Under the pieces are notes generated by a model, which worked only from the letters and a program-made list of their open reading frames with translations, was not told the origin of the DNA and made no database searches. Shown here in pieces: positions 15,124 to 32,391 of a stretch of DNA of 64,000 nucleotides (position 1 is the first letter of the stretch; each line of letters starts with the position of its first letter). Both the position numbers and the translations under genes were made by a program. This stretch comes from Macrostomum lignano (Eukaryota), in NCBI GenBank assembly GCA_002269645.1, contig NIVC01000525.1, positions 315,998 to 379,997 on the forward strand, written 5' to 3'.

Positions 15124-15187
15124 GGAGGGGCTAACAAAGATTTAATCAATTATGGGAGCTCAGATTAAAAAAGATGATAAAGCAAGC

Positions 15188-18100
15188 ATGATCGATAAAG
15201 TATTTGAACTCAGAGGAAAAGCAACTATTTTTCTATGTGGAGGTAAGTTTTATTATAAATTGTACATGATAAATCTAGTCTTAAAATATATAAGTTTAAT
15301 GAAGGCTTAAAGTTTATAATTTATATGAAAATCCAAAAAATTGGGCCATTCCTTTTTTCCTACAAATTTGCCAGGTCCATTTTCTAATATTAGATTATAT
15401 AGTGCTTGGTATAGCTTGCCTTTGCCCTAAAAAAATTCAAGATCTGTGCTTGATTTTTGCACCAGCTGGGCCTACTTGTTATTTTGGAGATGGTTGCTAT
15501 TCAAGGACTTGCCATTTAGGCATGTTTGCTATTGGAGGATGTTTGCTATCTATGGGAGGGGGTATTTGCTATCTAGAGAATGCTTGCTATTGGGAGGGGA
15601 AAGGGTTTTGCTATCTAAGGGAGGGGGTTCTTGCTATCTGTTGCTATCTAGGGGATGTTTGCTATGTGGGGATGCTTGCTGTCTAGAAGATGCTTTCTAT
15701 TTAGGGGGATGCTATCTTTGAGAGATGCTATCTTTGCAAAGGTTTTATTTTGTTGTGTCCTTTTATTACTCTAGAAAAAAAGAGATTTATAGCTAGCATA
15801 AGACTGCTAAAATATACTTTGAACTACTTAGGTATGGCTGGCTGCCTAGCCAAGACAACAGTTGCACCACTGGACCGAGTCAAAATCCTTCTCCAGACGC
15901 ACAATCATGCTCACGAATCTCATGGTAAGACCTGTCTTTGAAAATGTTTTATTGACTAAAGATTAATACTGTATAGAGAAATCAAAGTTTGCTTTGGTAG
16001 CAAACTTAATTGGCAATGACCTGCTCTCATAGTGCATTTGTATTCTCACTATTCTCAGGCATTTTCGGCACTCTTCGCCACATCTGGTCAGTTGAGGGCA
16101 TCGCTGGTTTCTATCGAAGCAATGGAGCTCAAATGATACGTATATTCCCCTACTCGGCTATACAATTTCTATCATTCGATGTGTACAATAATGTAAGCTT
16201 CTGGGGGACTGCTTGTGTTTCTTAGATTCATCTTCAGGCCTTGACGCTCTACTGTTGACCAATTTCAGAGTTTGTCAGCCTCGCTAGGCGAAGGCAATCT
16301 GACGCGACTGATAAGCGGGTCAATGGCTGGTGAGCGTTTAAGAAATCAACTTCAAACTGTTTGTGTGCATAGATGGGTTAATACAGGTAGTTGAATGATT
16401 GCGACAGAGCAGGTACAGACTGAAAATTCACGGGCACTAAAGTACGTCGCACTTAGCCAGACAGTAAGACGGTGAGATAATGGATAAGACACTGCGAGAG
16501 ACAAATAACGTAAAGACACTCTGTCACTGAAGACACTCTGTCACTGAAGACACTCTGTCACTGAAGACACTCTGTCACTGAAGACACTCTGTCACTGAAG
16601 ACACTCTGTCACTGAAGACACTCTGTCACTGAAGACACTCTGTCACTGAAGACACTCTGTCACTGAAGACACTCTGTCACTGAAGACACTCTGTCACTGA
16701 AGACACTCTGTCACTAAAGACACTTCAGACACTAAAGATAATTCAGACACTAAAGACACTCACAAACTAAAGATAAAGACAATAAAGACAGTCAGTCACC
16801 AAAAATACTCAGTCACTAATGACACCCAGGACACTAAGACATGCAGACAGACACCCAGGACACTAAGACATGCAGACAGACACCCAGGACACTAAGACAT
16901 GCAGACAGACACCAAGGGCACTAAGACATGCAGACAGACACCAAGGGCACTAAGACATGCAGACAGACACCCAGGACACTAAGGCATGCAGACAGACACC
17001 AGGGCACTAAGACATGCAGACAGACACCAAGGGCACTAAGACATGCAGACAGACACCAAGGGCACTAAGACATGAAGACAGACACCAAGGGCACTAAGAC
17101 ATGCAGACAGACACCCAGGACACTAAGACATGCAGACAGACACCAAGGGCACTAAGACATGCAGACAGGCACCAATGACACTAAGACACACAGACAGACA
17201 CCAAGGGCACTAAGACATGCAGACAGGCACCAAGGACACTAAGACACACAGACAGACACCAAGGGCACTAAGACATGCAGACAGACACCAAGGACACTAA
17301 GACATGCAGACAGACACCCAGGACACTAAGACACACAGACAGACACCAAGGGCACTAAGACATGCAGACAGACACCAAGGACACTAAGACATGCAGACAG
17401 ACACCAAGGACACTAAGACACACAGACAGACACCAAGGGCACTAAGACATGCAGACAGACACCCAGGACACTAAGACACACAGACAGACACCCAGGACAC
17501 TAAGACACACAGACAGACACCCAGGACACTAAGACATGCAGACAGACACCCAGGACACTAAGACACACAGACAGACACCCAGGACACTAAGACATGCAGA
17601 CAGACACCCAGGACACTAAGACATGCAGACAGACACCCAGGACACTAAGACATGCAGACAGACACCCAGGACACTAAGACATGCAGACAGACGCCCAGGA
17701 CACTAAGACATGCAGACAGACACCAAGACCCACAGCTCCTAATACACCGCAGGCATGACGGCAGTGTCGCTCACTTATCCACTGGACGTTGTTCGAACTC
17801 GACTGGCTTATCAGTCGGCCGGCTGCGCCGAGCATCCGCATAGCAACTATTCGGGCATCGCCGACTGTCTGCGCCACCTGCGCACCCAGCGCGCCCTGTT
17901 CGCCGGCCTGGCGCCCAGTCTGCTTGGCATGGCGCCTTACGCCGGCGTGAGCTTCTGCGCCTTCCACTGGCTTCAGAGGCAGGCCGTGGAGCGCTGGCCG
18001 GGTCTGTTCGCCGTGAGGGACGACGACGAGTCGCCTGCTCGACTGTGCACCTGGGCTCGACCCCTGATTGGTGGCCTGGCCGGAGCTGCCGCCCAGACAG

Positions 18101-18648
18101 TCAGCTACCCACTGGACTGCGCCCGGCGATACATGCAGGTCTGGCACTGACTGTGTGTGCGCGGGCACTTGCACTGTGTGTGCGCGGGCACTCGCACTGA
18201 CTGTGTGTGCGCGGGCACTGGCACTGACTTTGTGTGCGCGGGCACTGGCACTGACTGTGTGTGTGCGGGCACTGGCACTGACTGGTGTGTGTGTGTGCGG
18301 GCACTGGCACTGACTGCGTGTGTGCGGGCACTGGCACTGACTGTGTGTGCGCGGGCACTGGCACTGACTGTGTGTGTGCTGTCACTGTCACTCCATAACA
18401 AGGGCACTGTCACTCCATAACAAGGACACTGTCACTCTCAATTGCAGGTGGCGGGCGCTCCTGGCCGTTTCAGCTTGGCTGAAGTCCCGGCAGCGGGAGC
18501 CGCGGCCACGCTGTCGCAGCTGTACAGCCGCTACGGTGTGGCAGCCGGGCTGTACCGCGGCCTGTCGCTGAACTACGTGAGGGTGGTGCCGACCGCTGGC
18601 GTGTCATTTGCAGCCTACGAGACTTTGCGACAGGCGTTCGGGGTCTGA
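15188..18648 (+). CDS. SLC25A16: Mitochondrial carrier, Graves disease carrier / CoA transporter-like, 6 exons, 309 aa
   Basis: Exons: 15188-15242, 15832-15924, 16059-16192, 16269-16329, 17753-18138, 18448-18648 (930 nt, phases consistent). Three carrier signatures: PLDRVK, PLDVVR, PLDCAR. Also AGCLAKTTVAP, NGAQMIRIFPYSAIQF and GLYRGLSLNYVRVVP. The exon 1 start is less certain. Confidence 0.88.
16517..16715. repeat. 17-bp minisatellite (GAAGACACTCTGTCACT) in SLC25A16 intron 4
   Basis: About 12 near-perfect units. Confidence 0.96.
16825..17725. repeat. 29/30-bp minisatellite (GACACTAAGACATGCAGACAGACACCCAG) in SLC25A16 intron 4
   Basis: About 30 units ending about 27 nt before the acceptor. 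Confidence 0.96.
18143..18380. repeat. About 27-bp minisatellite (GCACTGACTGTGTGTGCGCGGGCACTG) in SLC25A16 intron 5
   Basis: Begins within about 5 nt of the donor. Confidence 0.93.
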
Positions 18649-24270: not shown

Positions 24271-24445
24271 TAGGTTCCAGGGTAGCTACAGAATGGGGTT
24301 CCAGGGTAGCTACAGAATGGGGTTCCAGGGTAGCTATAGAATGGGGTTCCAGGGTAGCTACAGAATGGGGTTCCAGGGTAGCTACAGAATGGGGTTCCAG
24401 GGTAGCTATAGAATGGGGTTCCAGGGTAGCTATAGAATGGGGATC
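24271..24445. repeat. 24-bp minisatellite (GGTTCCAGGGTAGCTACAGAATGG)
   Basis: About 7 units. Confidence 0.95.
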
Positions 24446-24962
24446 CAGAGTAGACAGATTAGCTATCAAGTGCACACAATGTACTACTTCAATACATGGT
24501 TATTTTCGCAGTCGCGCAAGAAAAAGCTCTTTCTCCTTTAACTGAGACTAATCTGTTAATTAGTGTAATTAGTTTTCCAGAGACACAAATTGCGGCAGTT
24601 GACTCGAACTGCGCACTGGACAGAGTTGAGTAAATGGCGCAGTGTGTATTTCAATCCGTGGCGCACAAAACTGTTTAGCCGGAGCCGTTGGGAGGATTAT
24701 AGTAGAGAATTAAATGTAGGTTGCCGAAAGGCTGTCAGCCAGGCAGAGGTATTAGTAATACTACTACTATTATCTATTAATTAGTATTATATGCATGCAG
24801 ATTTTTCTGGCCAGTTGGGACGTGCGTGATTAGTGAATATTATATGCAATCATCTTATACGGATTCGAATTCACGCCAGTCTGGTATTTCACAAATTTTG
24901 CATTTGTTAAAATCCAATCGGGATCACGTGGTCACTGACTTCTAAGAAAACGAACTCGAAGC

Positions 24963-26852
24963 TCAGATCAGCGTCTCGCGCGCGATCGGCGACTGCGAAC
25001 TGTCGCCATAGTAACGGCGCACAATGCGCGGCGGCCGGTAGGCGCCAAAATCGGCAACGCCGGCGTCACCGCTGCCGGTGGTGGCGCCGTCGTTGAAATC
25101 GTCGCCGCAGAAGCTGCTCTCGGCGTAGCGCGGGCCCAGCCGCCTGGCCCGTCGGCCGGAGTTCGAGCATCTCTCGCAGCCGTTGCAGCCGACCACCAGC
25201 CGCGCCGGCCCAGTGCTGTAGGGCGGGGGCGGCTGCCGCTGATCGGCGAGCAGATGAGGTCGGGGAGGCTGCCGAGCCAGCAGTGGCTCCTGCAGGCACA
25301 GCGGCGGCGGCGGCGGCGGATACGGCAGCGCCTTGGAGGCGACGCCAGCGGCGGCGAACTGCGGAAGCAGCGGCGATGGCGGAGTTCGCGACCTCTCCGG
25401 CTGCTGCTGCTGCTGCCATTGCCGGAGCACCGGCGAGCTGCCTTGGTTCAACTGACGGTGGCGTTGGCATCGCTGACGATGTCGACGCCTCCTCTGCTCC
25501 CGGTGGCACCGTCGGCGGCTGGCGCTGCGCGCCTCCTCCCCGGCGCTCTCCTCGTCGACATCCTCGCTGGACCGGCCCGACTGGTACTCCATCTCCAGCT
25601 CCTCCGGCGCTGCCTCGTCGTCCTCCTCGAACTCATCTTGGTCTTCTTCTTTCGACTCGTTCCCGTCTCTCTCGTCTTCCTTCTTAGTGCCGCCGGCGCT
25701 CCGTCGACGCCGACGCCCGACGTCGCAATAGTCGACGCGCGCCCGCTGCAGGCTGGCCCGCTGCTTCTGGCTGGCGATGCGCAGCAGGATGACGTCGCAC
25801 AGCATGGAGGACAGGCCGAACAGGGCCAGGCCGCTGCCCAGGTTCATCGACAGTCTGTAGAAATCGAACCGGCCGCCCTCGCCGCTGACCGTGACGAAGA
25901 TCTTGATGCCGTAGGCGTGCACCAGCATCCGACGGTCCTGGCCCTCGCTCCTGTAGTTGTAGGCGTACTGCACGGAGAAGCCCTCAATGTCCGTGCCTTT
26001 GCCGATGTCCAGCTCGCGGAAGTGGTACTTGGGCAGGCAGTGCTCCTCCGGCAGGTCGAAGTTGCACTGCCAGGAAATGTCGATGCCGAACGCGCCGCCG
26101 ATTTTGTAGACCTCCTCGCTGGTGGTGCCAGAATAGGCGAGGATGTCGCCGAGGCGGAACACTGGGCAGTAGGTGAGGTTTGGGTGCGCCTTGTCGTACA
26201 GGCAGGTGTTCAGGTACTCGCTGGTCATCCAGTCCAGGATGTTGCGCCGTTTCTTATCGAATGCTCGAAAATCGACGCTGTTTTTTAGCTGGACGGTGAA
26301 GTTCCTGGCACGGGTGAGCACCGAGCCGACTGGCAGGTTGAAGGCGTCCTGACTGGGCGCCGGGCACCAGCCGTAGCTGATGCAGGTTCTCGTGTCCGGG
26401 CTGCACCGGCCCGTGCGCCGGCCCTGACTGCTGATGCTGCCGGCCAGACAATCGCCGTCCTGATGGCAGTGTCCGACCGACTCCGGACACTCGCTCATGG
26501 CCTGCTTGTCGGTCACCCGAGCATTTGTTGTAATGAAAATGGCGCCATTCATGATCGGTGGTATGATGTAATCGGCCGAGTCCCACACTCTGGCGCCGTA
26601 GTCCGGATCTCCCGACCTGTTCACAAAGTCCAGGCCCTTCACTTTGAACACCACGCCGCCCTCCGGCGTCTCTATAACCTGGTAGCCTTTCTTGTGCCAG
26701 ATAATGTAGAACAGGAAGTAGACAATGACAGACAGCTGCACGCTGCGGTAGAACAGGCCGAACTTGACGCTGCGAATCACCACCACTTTCTGCAGGCGGT
26801 ACTCGAAGAACCCAGCCAGCATGCGGCTGAAGAACGATCTCAGGGAGCACAT
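24963..26852 (-). CDS. P2RX: P2X-family ion channel, intronless, atypical (629 aa from ATG 26852)
   Basis: FFEY N-terminus, TM1, WHKKGYQ, KVKG, WDSADY, ten ectodomain Cys, NFTVQLKN, CPVFRLG, AYG and TM2 GSGLALFG...LCD. It has a long acidic, Arg-rich and Pro-rich C-terminal tail. Confidence 0.95.
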   Translation of the reverse strand: MCSLRSFFSRMLAGFFEYRLQKVVVIRSVKFGLFYRSVQLSVIVYFLFYIIWHKKGYQVIETPEGGVVFKVKGLDFVNRSGDPDYGARVWDSADYIIPPIMNGAIFITTNARVTDKQAMSECPESVGHCHQDGDCLAGSISSQGRRTGRCSPDTRTCISYGWCPAPSQDAFNLPVGSVLTRARNFTVQLKNSVDFRAFDKKRRNILDWMTSEYLNTCLYDKAHPNLTYCPVFRLGDILAYSGTTSEEVYKIGGAFGIDISWQCNFDLPEEHCLPKYHFRELDIGKGTDIEGFSVQYAYNYRSEGQDRRMLVHAYGIKIFVTVSGEGGRFDFYRLSMNLGSGLALFGLSSMLCDVILLRIASQKQRASLQRARVDYCDVGRRRRRSAGGTKKEDERDGNESKEEDQDEFEEDDEAAPEELEMEYQSGRSSEDVDEESAGEEARSASRRRCHREQRRRRHRQRCQRHRQLNQGSSPVLRQWQQQQQPERSRTPPSPLLPQFAAAGVASKALPYPPPPPPLCLQEPLLARQPPRPHLLADQRQPPPPYSTGPARLVVGCNGCERCSNSGRRARRLGPRYAESSFCGDDFNDGATTGSGDAGVADFGAYRPPRIVRRYYGDSSQSPIARETLI

Positions 26853-28689
26853 CCTGGCCGGACTCTGGGAACCTGCCAACCGACTCTAGGAAAACCGGCC
26901 TTCCCTCCCGAGTAGAGCGTCTACCTTAAAGCGTCTACTGTCGCGTGGACGCGGAGGGAAGCTGCATGGAACTCGCGGATAGTGATTGGACAAGCAGCGC
27001 TGGCAACCCCCCTTCAAGCCCGTCCCCCCGGTCTCCTCCCTTCCATTCTCTCCAGAACCTTTTTCTCCAACTAGCGGCAGCTTCTCCCCATTGCCAATAA
27101 AATTCAACACACTGGCTGCATGAGGCCCGATGGTGACAGGGACAGCAGAGGAGAGCGATATTGCCTGAGCAGGGAGGGAGGGGAGGAACGGGCGAGGGGC
27201 GCTCGACTACAGAGAAGAAGCATGAAGGCCTCGGAGACAAGGGTAAAGGCGTTTGGCAGAGGCTAAAAGGGGAAGAAAGGGCCTTTCGGGCTTGCGGCGC
27301 CAGCCCGCGGGGCAAGGGCGCTGGAGATTAAAAAAATGACGGAAAAGGAAAGAAGGGAGCAGAGAGAGCTGGGCGGAGAGATTGGAGATCTGAAAGACGA
27401 GTATGGGAGGAACCGGCTAGAGGAAGAGAAAGTTCAGCCGATTTCGACCCGATATTTCCCCCTGTCTAATAAAGCTAGGGATGCCCCATCGAATCGCGGG
27501 CAAATCCCAGTCCGCCTGATCCCGACTCACAGGCTCACTCTGTTTCTGCTCCGCCGATCATCTTGGCTAGAGCCCGCGCCTCTGGGGAGCGCGCTCAACC
27601 CCCTGGCAGGCGATATAGGCTTCATCATCCATCCCGCTGATCAGCCTCCCCCTCCTCTGATCCCTGCCAGTATCTCTTCTACAGGGAGACTTATACTGAG
27701 GAGCTGATCCCATGCGAAGGGGAGAAGACAGGCAGACCGACGGCTAGATGACGAGAACCCCTGCCCCGCGGCCTGAGACAATACACGCACATAGACGGCA
27801 AGTTTACGAATGCGGCTACCATAGGACAGCTTCCAGATCGAATTAAACAAAAGCTCGATAGAGAAAGAGAGAAAGAATGGTTTAATAAAACCATGGGCTG
27901 CGTAGGCGGAGGCAAGGCGAAAGAAGTGTGGGAGTGAGGCATAGGCCAGCTAAAATCGACTGCTGCACGGCAATAACACGAACTATAAGCCCTGGAAACT
28001 CAGAACTTGGAGCAAAGTGGGCAAGCACTCCAAGGACAGGCAGATCTGAGCAGGGGGGGGGGGGGGTTCAGCAGGAAAGAGGCGGAGAAAGAGGAAGTAT
28101 ACTTGGCAGCAACGTGCAACCTGCATCTGTGTGTTGGGGTTGCTGATCGATGAATAGGCTGCGTTCCCCATTTTTCCTCAAAAAAGGAGGGCCTGAGGGA
28201 GACACTGGCTGCTGCTCCCCCAGTTTCCACCCAACCACTCCCCCGCTCCATCCCCTAGGGTTGGGTGGTGTATGATGCGAGAAAGAAAACTGGGGATTTT
28301 TCGCCCCCAATTCCCCTTTCCGATCCTGTTTCGTCAAGCCCAGCTGGCTGCATAGCGAGGCCGAGAATGCAGCGCGTGAGCAATGGGCTTGGCAGCTCAA
28401 TAGACAAAAACATAATCGGGAGAGACAAGTCTATCGTCAGGTGCAGACTCAGAGACAGAGGCAGCTCGCTCTAATGCACTGAAATGTTTGCATATATAAC
28501 ATTAATAGATGTTTGGATTCTATCGTAGAATCTCAATTCAAATTTCGGCAGGTACATTTTCCCCGGAGTACTGCTCCCAGCTGAAAATAATTCCCGCGCA
28601 GGCGAATCGATATCGCGCGACTAAATTCGCTAATTTCATTTCTTAGAAGTGTGCAGCACCAATTAGATAGCTGCCTATCAGACTGCCTA

Positions 28690-29850
28690 ATCTGCCTGTC
28701 TCAGCAGTTGCCCAGACTCTTAATCTCCTACCTGTCTCATTAGTACCCAGTCTCGCTAATCTATCTGCCTCATCAGTGCCCAGTCTCATCGATGTACTTG
28801 CCTCATCAGTGCCCAGTCTCCTCGATGTACCCGCCTCATCAGTGCCCAGTCTCCTCGATGTACTTGCCTCATCAGTAACCAGTCTTGCTAATCTACCTGC
28901 CTCACCAGTGCCCAGTCTCCTCAATGTACCTGCCTCATCAGTGCCCAGTCTCATCGATGTACTTGCCTCATCAGTGCCCAGTCTCCTCGATGTACTTGCC
29001 TCATCAGTAACCAGTCTTGCTAATCTACCTGCCTCACCAGTGCCCAGTCTCCTCAATGTACCTGCCTCATCAGTGCCCAGTCTCCTCGATGTACTTGCCT
29101 CATCAGTACCCAGTCTTGCTAATCTACCTGCCTCACCAGTGCCCAGTCTCCTCAATGTACCTGCCTCATCAGTGCCCAGTCTCCTCAATGTACCTGCCTC
29201 ACCAGTGCCCAGTCTCCTCAATGTACCTGCCTCATCAGTGCCCAGTCTCCTCGATGTACTTGCCTCATCAGTAACCAGTCTTGCTAATCTACCTGCCTCA
29301 CCAGTGCCCAGTCTCCTCAATGTACCTGCCTCATCAGTGCCCAGTCTCCTCGATGTACTTGCCTCATCAGTACCCAGTCTTGCTAATCTACCTGCCTCAC
29401 CAGTGCCCAGTCTCCTCAATGTACCTGCCTCATCAGTGCCCAGTCTCCTCAATGTACCTGCCTCATCAGTGCCCAGTCTCCTCAATGCACCTGCCTCATC
29501 AGTGCCCAGTCTGCTCGATGTACGCGTACTTGCCTCATCAGTGTCCAGTCTCCTCGATGTACCTGCCTCATCAGTGCCCAGTCTCCTCAATGTACCTGCC
29601 TCATCAGTGCCCAGTCTCCTCAATGCACCTGCCTCATCAGTGCCCAGTCTGCTCGATGTACGCGTACTTGCCTCATCAGTGTCCAGTCTCCTCGATGTAC
29701 CTGCCTCATCAGTGCCCAGTCTCCTCAATGTACCTGCCTCATCAGTGCCCAGTCTCCTCAATGTACCTGCCTCATCAGTGCCCAGTCTCCTCGATGTACC
29801 TGGCTCATCAGTGCCCAGTCTCCTCGATGGACTTGCCTCATCAGTGCCCA
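28690..29850. repeat. 33-bp complex minisatellite (CAGTGCCCAGTCTCCTCAATGTACCTGCCTCAT) with higher-order variant pattern
   Basis: About 35 units. It explains the RRLGTDEAG and VPSLL ORFs. Confidence 0.95.
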
Positions 29851-30106
29851 GTCCCGCTAATCCCTCGCAAATCTTTCAGACAAATTTGAATTACACTAGA
29901 GTTACAAGTCAAAAATGAAGACCTCTCTTGTTAAATTTTGTTTCCACTTCTCAAGCAACAATAAACAAACGATCAGACCAACTCATACAGTTTATTTCAG
30001 CTTCTGTCTCCATCTGATTTAACGCATTACCGAACTCATCCGTACACTCGACTAAACAAAACTGTCAATCAAGCTAACAGACACAACGGCACAGTTAGGC
30101 TAGCTT

Positions 30107-32032
30107 TTAAGCCTCCATCGCGTTGGCATCGGCCTCGGAGTACTTGCCCTTCTCGGCGCCTCGGGCCCTGCCGGCGGCTTTGCGGTCCAACAGGCCGCGC
30201 CTGTCCCGGTCCAGCTTGAGCTTCGTGATCACCACCTGAGGCGGAATTCATAGGTGAGGGTCTTTGAAGTGAAGACTGCGGCTCTTGAAAGTTTGGTTAT
30301 GGCGATTCTTAATGGGGCTGGGGGCGATTCCTAATGGGGTCGGGGCGATTCTTAATGGGGTTGGGGCGATTCTTAATGGGGTTGGGGCGATTCCTAATGG
30401 GGTTGGGGCGATTCTTAATGGGGTTGGGGCGATTCCTAATGGGGTTGGGGCAATTCCTAATGGGGTTGAGGGCGATTATTAATGGGGTTGGGGGCGATTC
30501 CTAATGGGGTTGAGGGCGACTCATAATGGGGTTGGGGGCGATTCCTAATGGGGCTGGGCGATTCCTAATGAGGGTTTGGGGGCGATTTTTAATAGGTATT
30601 TTGCAATGGGGTTCTTAAAATGTTTTTGAGCAGCATGTAAAAGTCAAAAATTGAAAGTCAATAGTTCAAGTCTATTAGTGGGAGAGAAAAACCAGCAGTC
30701 GAGTCGAGAACACGCTAACCATACTAAATAGCAGGAAGCTTAGTCTGCCTGATGAGTAAAATAGTACTCAAATGTCTGGCCTTACAAATTATCAAAAGAC
30801 TGGTTTCCAATCATTTTTGCTTCGCATGAGAGCAAGAGACGAAAAAAAGTTGCTTTTATATTAAAGAATTTCAGACGATGCAGTCAGGACAGGTGCATGC
30901 GTGTGTAGAAGCTAATATGGCAAAGGTGTGCGTTTCTAGATCCGAAAACAGCGTCATTGGAGGGGTGTTCTTCAAGCCGAAGGGAGCCGAGCCTAAGATG
31001 GGTGTCTGTGGAGCCTAAGATGGGTGTCTGTGGAGCCTAATATGGGTGTCTGTGGAGCCTAAGATGGGTGTCTGTGGAGCCTAAGATGGGTGTCTGTGGA
31101 GCCTAAGATGGGTGTCTGTGGAGCCTAAGATGGGTGTCTGTGGAGCCTAAGATGGGTGTCTGTGGAACCTAAGATGGGTGTCTGTGGAGCCTAAGATGGG
31201 TATCTGTGGAGCCTAAGATGGGTGTCTGTGGAGCCTAAGATGGGTGTCTGTGGAGCCTAAGATGGGTGTCTGTGGAGCCTAAGATGGGTGTCTGTGGAGC
31301 CTAAGATGGGTATCTGTGGAGCCTTAGATGGGTGTCTGTGGAGCCTAAGATGGGTGTCTGTGGAGCCTAAGATGGGTGTCTGTGGAGCCTAAGATGGGTG
31401 TCTGTGGAGCCTAAGATGGGTGTCCGGGAAGCCTAAGATGGGTGTTTGTGAAGGCTAAGTTGGGTGTCTGTAAAGGCTAAGATGGGTGTTTGTGGAGCCT
31501 AAGATGGGTGTCTGTGGAGCCTAAGATAGGTGTCCGGGAAGCCTAAGATGTGTTAGTGGAGCCTAAGATGGGTGTCCAGGCTAAGATGGTTGTCTGTAAA
31601 GGCTAAGATGGGTGTCCGGGAAGCCTAAATGCCTTACATCTTTTTTCGGTGAACTTGAAGCGAAATGGTGAACAGTAATAGAGGGGTCACGTCTAAAAAA
31701 GCAGAACTTCCGTCCATTATTACCTTGCTAGGATGCAGGTTAACATAGACGGTAGCACCGTTAGCCTTCTCCCTTTGAATCCGTTCCACGTGGATGACAT
31801 ACTTGGAACGATAGACTGCCACCACTTTGCCAGTCTGGGTGCCCTTGTGGTGACCCCGGACAAGTTGCACCTCGTCGTCTTTGCGGATGGGCATAGAGCG
31901 GACATTGTACTTGGTGCGCAGCTCCTTGGACAGCGGAGCCGACATCAGCTTGCGTCGAATGTGCGACGGCGCATTGAAATAGCGCTGGCGATTCTTCCGC
32001 TTGGAGCTGGTGACGCTCTTGTTGAACTTCAT
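30107..32032 (-). CDS. RPL26: 60S ribosomal protein L26 (uL24), 145 aa, 2 coding exons
   Basis: Exons 32032-31724 ([24 protein letters not shown]...HPSK) and 30235-30107 ([12 protein letters not shown]...MEA*). A probable non-coding first exon has its GTGAGT donor near 32092. Confidence 0.97.
30310..30590. repeat. About 21-bp minisatellite (GGGCGATTCCTAATGGGGTTG) in RPL26 intron
   Basis: Tandem G-rich units. Confidence 0.93.
31005..31625. repeat. 22-bp minisatellite (GCCTAAGATGGGTGTCTGTGGA) in RPL26 intron
   Basis: About 28 units. Confidence 0.96.
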
Positions 32033-32391
32033 CTCTGCTGCTGCAATAGTTAACAATTGCGATTTGATTATTGTTGAATCCGTTAACTCACATCAGTTCG
32101 CGATCTCCACGCAGCAGACAATACAACGATTTTCCCCCTCAAACTCAAAAGTGAATCAGTTCCCACTGTTAATAATTACGCAACTGATACTGCCATTTGA
32201 CTGCCGGGTAGTGTTGTTTGGTGGTATAAGGAATATGATTTCATCCTTTGACTTTGGACCTGTGATTCTAAAATATAATCGAGGTTTTTGTATACTACAA
32301 GTACATACTTTACGAGTATAAAAGATGCATAGCCATGAATTTTTATTAGGGATGGGGGCGTCATGGGGTAGGGGTGCCACCTCGGAGGCGT

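What the first reader, a model, noticed from the sequence alone, without database searches (positions are those of the whole stretch)
24963..26852. P2X channel that has lost half of the canonical ATP-binding site
Seen: the fold is well preserved (10 Cys, both TMs, KVK, NFT..K). However, the conserved GYNFRFAKY motif reads GFSVQYAYN (about 25960-25982), and the lysine of RTLIKAYG (K313 in human P2X4) is His (RMLVHAYG, about 25918). The N-terminal Y-x-T-x-K/R motif has Leu in place of Thr (YRLQK), and the post-TM2 YxxxK motif is absent. Established: the N and R of NFR and this Lys contact ATP phosphates from the neighbouring subunit, and mutating them sharply reduces ATP potency. Inference: an intact 629-codon ORF with these changes suggests a functional channel gated by another ligand or by protons, or a modulatory subunit that supplies only one face of the inter-subunit pocket in heterotrimers.
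Basis: partly seen in the sequence, partly recalled or inferred. Interest (0 to 1): 0.72.

Follow-up and report, generated by a model that had tools for sequence, protein, structure and literature searches.

The report
Flatworm P2X subunit missing ATP-clamp face
This is a real, transcribed and selectively maintained gene of the flatworm Macrostomum lignano for a P2X-type ion-channel subunit that keeps the whole channel architecture but has replaced one face of the ATP-binding pocket, so it probably no longer works as an ordinary ATP-gated channel on its own.

Summary
Window 24963-26852 (-) is an intact, intronless 629-codon P2X gene of Macrostomum lignano (transcript cluster Mlig019017; Pfam PF00864 E=1e-98; 40% identical to human P2X4).

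Among 67 columns at least 80% conserved in about 170 family representatives, it deviates at only seven:
- N293S, F294V, R295Q and K312H, the lower-body face of the ATP pocket.
- E166P, the equivalent of rat P2X2 E167, which forms a salt bridge with the NFR arginine.
- E158I.
- T20L.

KxK, FT..K, the ten cysteines and the TM2 pore motif are kept.

It is not a decaying pseudogene. Three 99%-identical genomic copies differ by 10 synonymous and 5 non-synonymous changes (omega about 0.16, p=0.0005). The GenBank gene models are transcript-based.

A second M. lignano paralogue, 63% identical, shares all seven changes. The two have near-identical TM helices (88-89%) but only 56% identical ectodomains.

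The clade is separate from another degenerate-site P2X clade in parasitic flatworms.

Function is untested. I favour an accessory subunit of heterotrimers (about 0.4) over a homomeric channel with non-ATP gating (about 0.3). It is a new variant of a known kind, of moderate interest.

The parts
24963..26852 (-). Complete intronless CDS of a divergent P2X subunit (629 codons plus stop at 24963-24965). It is one of three ~99% identical genomic copies of M. lignano transcript cluster Mlig019017.
25761..26807 (-). P2X_receptor domain (residues 16-364)
   Evidence: Pfam PF00864 E=1.2e-98. AF2 model pLDDT 78, with TM-score 0.74 normalised to the query and 0.86 to the target against human P2X1, and 0.74/0.76 against human P2X4.
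26787..26801 (-). N-terminal YRLQK, where the family has Y-x-T-x-K/R. Thr20 is replaced by Leu, also in the paralogue P0031.
26691..26765 (-). TM1 (residues 30-54). It is 88% identical to paralogue P0031 but only 28% identical to canonical flatworm P2X.
26637..26645 (-). KVK (K70, K72), which is the KxK phosphate-binding lysines of the upper-body face; retained.
26355..26357 (-). Pro166 in WCPAP, where 90% of family members have Glu. This is the equivalent of rat P2X2 E167, the closed-state salt-bridge partner of the NFR arginine.
26283..26303 (-). NFTVQLK. The FT motif and K190 are retained. The adenine-contacting Leu/Phe position (188) is Gln.
25968..25976 (-). SVQ in place of the NFR motif (N293S, F294V, R295Q).
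25917..25919 (-). His312 in place of the phosphate-binding Lys (human P2X4 K313, zebrafish P2X4 K316).
25779..25862 (-). TM2 / pore helix (residues 331-358) with NLGSGLAL and the conserved Asp353. It is 89% identical to paralogue P0031.
25737..25751 (-). LQRAR in place of the post-TM2 YxxxK motif.
24966..25736 (-). C-terminal tail of 257 residues, low in complexity and rich in R, P, E, S and Q. It has no Pfam domain. Among the three copies it shows 6 synonymous and 2 non-synonymous differences. Copy L003 carries a 1-bp deletion at codon 387 that changes and shortens the tail.
26883..26900 (-). Polypyrimidine tract plus AG (ggttttcctagAG|T) immediately before the first base of the annotated transcript-derived CDS. 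It is a putative spliced-leader trans-splice acceptor (inference only).

Best explanation
Shown:
- The ORF is a transcribed, selectively maintained, intronless paralogue of the P2X channel family in Macrostomum lignano.
- It keeps the trimeric-channel architecture: two TM helices, ten disulfide cysteines, the TM2 pore motif with the conserved Asp, and the upper-body KxK/FT..K face.
- In it and in a 63%-identical sister paralogue, the lower-body face of the inter-subunit ATP pocket (NFR and the K313-equivalent Lys) has been replaced, together with the Glu that pairs with the NFR arginine in the closed state.

Inferred:
- Two copies of this subunit side by side cannot form a canonical ATP-phosphate clamp, so homotrimers should be insensitive, or very poorly sensitive, to ATP.
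- Most likely mechanism: it acts as an accessory subunit that co-assembles with the canonical, multi-exon M. lignano P2X subunits (Mlig014818 and Mlig027460 types).
- In such a heterotrimer its intact KxK/FT..K face completes one ATP site with a canonical neighbour, and its SVQ/His face kills the adjacent site.
- The receptor would then have two ATP sites (one divergent subunit) or one (two divergent subunits), and altered gating, desensitisation and trafficking. The altered trafficking would follow from the missing N-terminal Thr, the missing YxxxK and the long tail.
For: Family, fold and architecture.

The deviations are focused. Only 7 of 67 highly conserved columns change. Four are the lower-body ATP face and one is the E167-equivalent (p=4.6e-5). 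Loss of R295 and loss of E166 are associated across the family (odds ratio 34, p=8e-7).

Purifying selection: 10 synonymous versus 5 non-synonymous differences among three copies, omega 0.16, p=0.0005. Non-synonymous sites are 3-fold less variable than the flanks, p=0.008.

The clade is conserved. Paralogue P0031 shares all seven changes, with TM1 88% and TM2 89% identical against 56% for the ectodomain, and the two form a 100%-bootstrap clade.

Expression: the GenBank models of this assembly derive from RNA-seq transcripts (PMC5730564), and the models BOX15_Mlig019017g1/g2 exist.

Canonical partners exist in the same genome.

Literature (PMC3874471):
- The ATP site is inter-subunit.
- K69A and K308A P2X2 mutants complement each other.
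- Two ATP sites suffice for opening.
- R295K and K313R make rat P2X4 non-functional.

Precedent: Dictyostelium dP2XC and dP2XD give no nucleotide currents and suppress dP2XB currents when co-expressed (PMC2787382).
Against: - There is no functional, co-expression or localisation data.
- Keeping the KxK/FT..K face is expected by default, since 90% of conserved columns are kept, so it does not specifically support heteromerisation.
- The sister paralogue's gene model lacks the KxK strand altogether, although that model is of doubtful quality.
- TM1 is only 28% identical to the canonical paralogues, so compatibility for co-assembly is unproven.
- L188Q on the retained face would also weaken adenine contact in a mixed site.
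- The selection test rests on only 15 substitutions.
Confidence: 0.4

Rival explanations
1. It is a homomeric P2X-derived channel gated by something other than ATP: another small ligand, protons (His312 is titratable) or constitutive/leak activity after loss of the R-E closed-state lock. It may sit in an intracellular membrane, because the YxxxK surface-retention motif is absent.
For: - The changes hit both phosphate contacts and the adenine contact L188Q, which is unique among about 170 sequences. The whole ligand specificity looks altered, not just one face.
- The sister paralogue also lacks KxK, suggesting that no ATP face is constrained in this clade.
- The TM1/TM2 sequences are very strongly conserved and clade-specific, which argues for a clade-specific pore or gating function.
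- The E166/R295 pair is lost together.
- OtP2X also lacks YxxxK, and Dictyostelium P2X proteins are intracellular (PMC3853471; PMC2787382).
- The authors of the dP2XC/D work raise non-nucleotide gating as a possibility.
Against: - No P2X-family member with a proven non-nucleotide agonist is known to me or was found in the literature searches.
- No candidate ligand can be derived from the sequence.
- His312 is Arg in the paralogue, so a titratable residue is not conserved.
Confidence: 0.3
2. It is still an ATP-gated homomeric channel, but with very low potency (high micromolar to millimolar), using K70, K72, K190 and His/Arg312 for the phosphates.
For: - Dictyostelium P2XA lacks NFR and the K68 equivalent yet is ATP-gated (PMC2633282).
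- OtP2X has NIR and an EC50 of about 250 uM (PMC3853471).
- The pocket keeps three lysines, Thr186 and a basic or titratable residue at 312.
Against: - Single substitutions at the NFR Arg and at the K313-equivalent Lys already cost 90-1400-fold in potency in human P2X1, and they abolish function in rat P2X4, even for conservative R295K or K313R (PMC3874471). Here N, F, R and K are all replaced, along with L188.
- dP2XA still needs its K309-equivalent Lys, and that residue is missing here.
Confidence: 0.15
3. It is a non-functional relic: a retroposed P2X copy that is transcribed but drifting.
For: - The gene is intronless, whereas the canonical paralogues have six or more coding exons.
- The stem branch is long.
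- Several functional motifs are lost at once.
- One of the three copies has a frameshift in the tail.
- No orthologue outside M. lignano was found.
Against: - Omega is about 0.16 (p=0.0005), and non-synonymous sites are less variable than the flanks.
- 60 of 67 highly conserved columns, and all ten Cys, are kept despite about 55% overall divergence.
- A 629-codon ORF is intact in a GC-rich context.
- The divergent paralogue has 88-89% identical TM helices.
- The frameshift lies after TM2, and could be a long-read indel error.
Confidence: 0.07

Closest known systems
Canonical flatworm and vertebrate P2X receptors (e.g. Schistosoma mansoni P2X, human P2X4/P2X1; Pfam PF00864)
   Same: - 43-45% identity to flatworm P2X and 40% to human P2X4 over the whole domain.
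- Same fold (TM-score up to 0.86).
- Two TM helices, ten Cys, KxKG, FT..K and the TM2 NxGSG...D pore motif.
   Different: - NFR is SVQ and K313 is His.
- The E167-equivalent is Pro and L188 is Gln.
- The N-terminal Thr is Leu and there is no YxxxK.
- The gene is intronless and encodes a 257-residue low-complexity tail.
M. lignano paralogue UniProt A0A1I8ISC6 (P0031)
   Same: - Sister in a 100%-bootstrap clade.
- It shares all seven deviations from the family consensus and Gln188.
- TM1 and TM2 are 88-89% identical.
   Different: - 63% identity overall.
- VVE/Arg instead of SVQ/His.
- The gene model lacks the KxK beta-strand and carries a doubtful 270-residue N-terminal extension.
- Its DNA could not be retrieved.
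Divergent P2X clade of parasitic flatworms (Trichobilharzia, Schistosoma margrebowiei, Opisthorchis/Clonorchis, Fasciola, Dibothriocephalus; P0050, P0082, P0075, P0067, P0093, P0055)
   Same: - It also has degenerate ATP residues, for example schistosomatids with S-M/L-R and His at the Lys position, and Opisthorchis with S-Q-Q and Gln.
- Members that lost the Arg also lost the E167-equivalent.
   Different: - It forms a separate group in the NJ tree.
- It carries three large ectodomain inserts, MPKVV instead of ETQKV and a CDDKTL motif, none of which the window protein has.
- The degeneration is therefore most likely independent.
Dictyostelium dP2XC / dP2XD
   Same: They are P2X-family proteins that give no nucleotide-evoked currents on their own, and they abolish currents of an ATP-gated paralogue when co-expressed (PMC2787382).
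   Different: - They are very distant amoebozoan, intracellular (contractile-vacuole) proteins.
- Their ATP-site residues were not compared here.
Mammalian P2X6 (heteromer-dependent subunit)
   Same: It is a subunit that functions essentially only in heterotrimers (own knowledge; the review PMC3866589 was listed but not read).
   Different: P2X6 keeps the canonical ATP-binding residues. Its limitation is in assembly and trafficking, not in the pocket (own knowledge).

Membership tests
P2X receptor family (structural family, Pfam PF00864) | Significant match to the P2X_receptor profile over the full domain | tested here: met
   E=1.2e-98, 331 bits against a cut-off of 27, profile positions 1-352 of 361
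P2X receptor family (structural family, Pfam PF00864) | P2X subunit fold: two TM helices flanking a beta-rich ectodomain | tested here: met
   AF2 model pLDDT 78 with helices 29-53 and 331-385. Foldseek top hits are all P2X1/2/3/4/7, E about 1e-35, TM-score 0.74 normalised to the query and up to 0.86 to the target.
P2X receptor family (structural family, Pfam PF00864) | Ten conserved ectodomain cysteines | tested here: met
   C122, 129, 135, 150, 157, 163, 217, 229, 263 and 272 fall in invariant or near-invariant columns
P2X receptor family (structural family, Pfam PF00864) | TM2 pore motif (N-x-G-S-G-L-A ... conserved Asp) | tested here: met
   SMNLGSGLALFGLSSMLCD; N337, G339, S340 and D353 fall in invariant columns
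ATP-gated P2X receptor (functional class) | KxKG lysines (zebrafish P2X4 K70/K72) | tested here: met
   FKVKG
ATP-gated P2X receptor (functional class) | FT motif and K193-equivalent lysine | tested here: met
   NFTVQLK. The neighbouring adenine-contact Leu is Gln.
ATP-gated P2X receptor (functional class) | NFR motif (N296/R298 of zebrafish P2X4 contact the beta/gamma phosphates) | tested here: not met
   SVQ. N is conserved in 87%, F in 81% and R in 94% of family representatives.
ATP-gated P2X receptor (functional class) | Lys equivalent to zebrafish P2X4 K316 / human P2X4 K313 | tested here: not met
   His312; Lys is present in 93% of representatives
ATP-gated P2X receptor (functional class) | N-terminal YxTxK/R and C-terminal YxxxK motifs | tested here: not met
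   YRLQK and LQRAR. YxxxK is also absent from the functional OtP2X, so this feature is not strictly defining.
ATP-gated P2X receptor (functional class) | ATP-evoked cation current | not testable with these tools
   Requires electrophysiology
Retrogene (retroposed copy of a multi-exon parent) | Intronless CDS while the parental paralogues are multi-exonic | tested here: met
   The window CDS is a single 1.9-kb ORF. Mlig014818g1 spans 12.8 kb with six or more coding blocks, and Mlig027460g1 spans 4.9 kb with several blocks.
Retrogene (retroposed copy of a multi-exon parent) | Poly(A) remnant or target-site duplications | tested here: inconclusive
   None is visible by eye in the 800 bp downstream or the 550 bp upstream. 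They would be expected to have eroded at this divergence.

The most novel reading that the evidence does not exclude
Flatworms have evolved P2X-derived 'orphan' channels at least twice: the Macrostomum Mlig019017/A0A1I8ISC6 clade, and a clade spanning trematodes and a cestode. These channels kept the trimeric pore and the gating scaffold but gave up ATP as agonist, and are gated by a different stimulus such as protons or another ligand. They would be the first P2X-family channels with a non-nucleotide agonist.
Probability: 0.25. Interest if true: 0.8.

Novelty: new variant of a known kind. Interest (0 to 1): 0.52.

Why it matters
P2X receptors are defined by ATP gating, and the lysines and the NFR motif are treated as universal. 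A selectively maintained subunit with one pocket face replaced is a natural experiment on two questions. The first is how many intact ATP sites a trimer needs. The second is whether the P2X scaffold can be re-used for another stimulus.

M. lignano is transgenic- and RNAi-tractable, so the question can be tested in vivo.

A parallel degenerate-site clade in schistosomes, liver flukes and a tapeworm suggests an unstudied class of parasite ion channels. If the subunit turns out to be only a silent or dominant-negative partner, it is a modest addition to P2X heteromer biology.

Tried and rejected
1. The search for homologous proteins with the P0031 domain and with a two-sequence alignment of the C-terminal halves returned nothing, not even the query's own cluster.

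2. The look-up of encoding contigs for P0031 reported 'not on record'. I therefore could not compute dN/dS between the two divergent paralogues, and could not check its KxK deletion or its intron content.

3. The first whole-locus BLAST was swamped by tandem repeats, and a full MAFFT run timed out. Both were redone with trimmed regions or faster settings.

4. I looked for a second P2X copy in the window and found none.

5. I considered that the window protein belongs to the neodermatan degenerate-site clade. I rejected this because it lacks that clade's three inserts and signature motifs, and groups apart from it in the NJ tree. The deep nodes of that tree are weak (47% support), and NJ is prone to long-branch artefacts.

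6. I considered a pseudogene and rejected it on omega and on the conservation pattern.

7. I looked for retrogene hallmarks (poly(A) remnant, target-site duplications) and saw none.

8. Literature searches for this gene, for M. lignano P2X or for ATP-site-less flatworm P2X found nothing specific. A sponge paper notes P2X-like sequences that lack the motifs, without functional data.

9. The structure tool returns no coordinates and no multimer, so neither the pocket nor the trimer could be modelled.
Full report
**Source and gene.** The window is Macrostomum lignano, a free-living flatworm (assembly Mlig_3_7, GCA_002269645.1, contig NIVC01000525.1). The protein of this ORF is recorded on that contig, and the fetched locus L001 is identical to window 14963-36882.
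- The ORF runs 24963-26879 on the minus strand. The first ATG is at 26852, giving 629 codons.
- An in-frame TAG lies just upstream.
- The transcript-derived GenBank CDS starts at 26882, directly after a polypyrimidine tract and an AG. That looks like a spliced-leader acceptor, but this is inference only.
- Neighbouring genes are RPL26 (window about 30107-32038, minus strand) and a mitochondrial carrier (about 15152-18648, plus strand).
- The rest of the window is dominated by tandem repeats, with 31 TRF rows.

- Pfam P2X_receptor matches at E=1.2e-98.
- Human P2X4 matches at E=3.7e-74 and about 40% identity over residues 11-365.
- An AlphaFold2 model (pLDDT 78) matches solved P2X1/P2X4 chains, with TM-score 0.74 normalised to the query and up to 0.86 to the target.
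- KVK, NFT..K, the ten cysteines and the TM2 motif are present.
- NFR reads SVQ, and the K313-equivalent is His. The N-terminal Thr is Leu, and YxxxK reads LQRAR.

**How specific the loss is.** I aligned the protein with about 170 P2X representatives from an exhaustive HMMER search. Among 67 columns conserved in at least 80% of them, the protein deviates at only seven: T20L, E158I, E166P, N293S, F294V, R295Q and K312H.
- All four lower-body pocket columns are among the seven (hypergeometric p=4.6e-5). This test is post hoc.
- E166 corresponds to rat P2X2 E167. That residue forms a closed-state salt bridge with the NFR arginine, which switches to ATP on activation (Hausmann 2013, as summarised in PMC3874471).
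- Across the family, loss of the Arg and loss of this Glu go together (odds ratio 34, p=8e-7). This figure is not corrected for phylogeny, and I count about 4-5 independent events.
- The adenine-contacting position 188 (Leu, Phe or Met elsewhere) is Gln. Gln occurs there in no other representative except the sister paralogue.
- The protein has therefore lost the ATP clamp rather than diverged generally.

**What the literature says about the lost residues (PMC3874471).**
- zfP2X4 K70, K72, N296, R298 and K316 coordinate the triphosphate.
- The pocket is formed by the upper body of one chain and by the lower body and dorsal fin of the neighbouring chain.
- Alanine or cysteine substitutions at the NFR Arg and at the K316-equivalent cost 17-1400-fold in potency in human P2X1. 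R295K and K313R abolish function in rat P2X4.
- K69A and K308A P2X2 subunits complement each other, and two occupied sites are reported to suffice for opening.

**It is not a decaying pseudogene.** The genome holds three syntenic copies (L001/window, L002, L003), each with RPL26 upstream. They are about 99% identical across coding sequence and flanks.
- Their coding sequences differ at 15 substitution sites, 10 synonymous and 5 non-synonymous.
- With 447 synonymous and 1440 non-synonymous sites, omega is about 0.16 (binomial p=0.0005). Non-synonymous sites vary 3-fold less than the flanks (p=0.008).
- The numbers are small, but sequencing error would bias this test towards neutrality.
- Copy L003 has a 1-bp deletion at codon 387, after TM2, which replaces the tail. 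It could be real or a long-read indel error.
- The GenBank annotation of this assembly was built only from RNA-seq-supported transcripts. Names are shared by transcripts at least 95% identical (PMC5730564), so the models Mlig019017g1/g2 imply transcription. Expression of individual copies cannot be resolved.

**The changes define a clade.**
- The exhaustive search found one closer relative, P0031 (63% identity, E=3e-128). It is also from M. lignano (UniProt A0A1I8ISC6).
- It shares all seven deviations and Gln188, with VVE/Arg in place of SVQ/His.
- The two group with 100% bootstrap support on a long stem, inside a weakly supported (47%) flatworm group.
- TM1 is 88% and TM2 89% identical between them, against 56% for the ectodomain. 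TM1 is only 28% identical to canonical paralogues. Canonical pairs with the same ectodomain divergence show 48-68% identity in TM1.
- This indicates strong, clade-specific constraint on the membrane and pore part, and weaker constraint on the former ligand site.
- P0031's gene model also lacks the KxK strand and has an implausible 270-residue N-terminal extension. I could not obtain its DNA to check either.
- No orthologue outside M. lignano was seen. The word-based search missed even P0031, so absence is weak evidence.

**Origin.** The canonical M. lignano P2X genes are multi-exonic. Mlig014818g1 has six or more coding blocks over 12.8 kb, and Mlig027460g1 spans 4.9 kb. This gene is a single exon. 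Retroposition followed by divergence is plausible, but no poly(A) remnant or target-site duplications remain.

**Comparison with other degenerate-site P2X proteins.** About ten of the roughly 170 representatives have three or more of the five phosphate-contact residues replaced.
- Six of them form a clade of parasitic flatworms: Trichobilharzia, Schistosoma margrebowiei, Opisthorchis/Clonorchis, Fasciola (two genes) and Dibothriocephalus.
- That clade has three large ectodomain inserts and its own signature motifs. The window protein lacks these and does not group with it, so the degeneration is probably convergent.
- Others come from hagfish, from Littorina and from an unnamed Logan contig.
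- Functional precedents are Dictyostelium dP2XC and dP2XD, which give no nucleotide currents and are dominant-negative on dP2XB (PMC2787382).
- Counter-examples are Dictyostelium P2XA, which lacks NFR and the K68 equivalent yet is ATP-gated, and OtP2X, which has NIR, no YxxxK and an EC50 of about 250 uM (PMC2633282; PMC3853471).
- A sponge study noted P2X-like sequences without the motifs but did not test them.
- I found no paper on this gene or on flatworm degenerate-site P2X proteins.

**Mechanism.**
- Shown: this is a conserved P2X channel scaffold under purifying selection, and the lower-body ATP face and its Glu partner are gone.
- Inferred: homotrimers cannot form a canonical ATP site.
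- I favour an accessory subunit in heterotrimers with canonical paralogues (0.4). This is the usual fate of subunits that lose one face of an inter-subunit site, two sites suffice for P2X opening, and the Dictyostelium precedent exists.
- The alternatives are a homomeric channel with non-ATP gating (0.3), residual low-potency ATP gating (0.15), and a transcribed relic (0.07).
- Keeping the KxK face does not discriminate between these, because 90% of conserved columns are kept anyway.

**Verdict.** The gene is a new variant of a known kind. Interest is moderate (0.52), and would be higher if a non-nucleotide agonist were found.

Noticed in passing
Proteins P0050, P0082, P0075, P0067, P0093, P0055 (not in the window): A clade of divergent P2X paralogues occurs in parasitic flatworms: Trichobilharzia szidati, Schistosoma margrebowiei, Opisthorchis/Clonorchis, Fasciola hepatica/gigantica (two genes) and Dibothriocephalus latus. 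Their ATP-contact residues are degenerate, for example S-M-R with His, or S-Q-Q with Gln. They also have three large ectodomain inserts. I found no literature on them.
   Followed up: partly
Family-wide alignment (columns of window residues 295 and 166): Loss of the NFR arginine is strongly associated with loss of the Glu equivalent to rat P2X2 E167, its closed-state salt-bridge partner. Eight of 12 sequences without the Arg also lack the Glu, against 8 of 143 with the Arg (p=8e-7, not corrected for phylogeny).
   Followed up: partly
Proteins P0076 (Eptatretus/Myxine 'P2X3-like'), P0053 (Littorina saxatilis), P0070 (unnamed Logan contig): Further P2X-family proteins outside flatworms have three or more phosphate-contact residues replaced. 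The hagfish protein, for example, has S-F-K and Gln at the Lys position.
   Followed up: no
L003:7160 region (codon 387 of the copy on NIVC01000441.1): One of the three genomic copies has a 1-bp deletion just after TM2. It gives a 467-residue product with an unrelated Arg-rich tail. This is either a real truncation allele or a long-read indel error.
   Followed up: partly
P0031 (UniProt A0A1I8ISC6), residues 1-270 and around residue 320: The sister paralogue's gene model has a 270-residue N-terminal extension that looks like read-through or antisense translation. It also lacks the roughly 26 residues holding the KxK strand. The model needs checking against the Mlig_3_7 genome.
   Followed up: no
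window 24273-24453, 28729-29853 and 29 other arrays: The window is packed with tandem repeats of 4-47 bp units, giving 31 TRF rows with score at least 200. Examples are a 24-bp array about 500 bp downstream of the P2X stop codon and a 33-bp array of 34 copies between P2X and RPL26. Most long ORFs in the window other than P2X lie in such arrays.
   Followed up: no
window ~30107-32038 (-) and ~15152-18648 (+): The flanking genes are ribosomal protein L26 upstream and a mitochondrial carrier downstream on the opposite strand. RPL26 is syntenic in all three genomic copies, consistent with segmental or whole-genome duplication of the block.
   Followed up: partly
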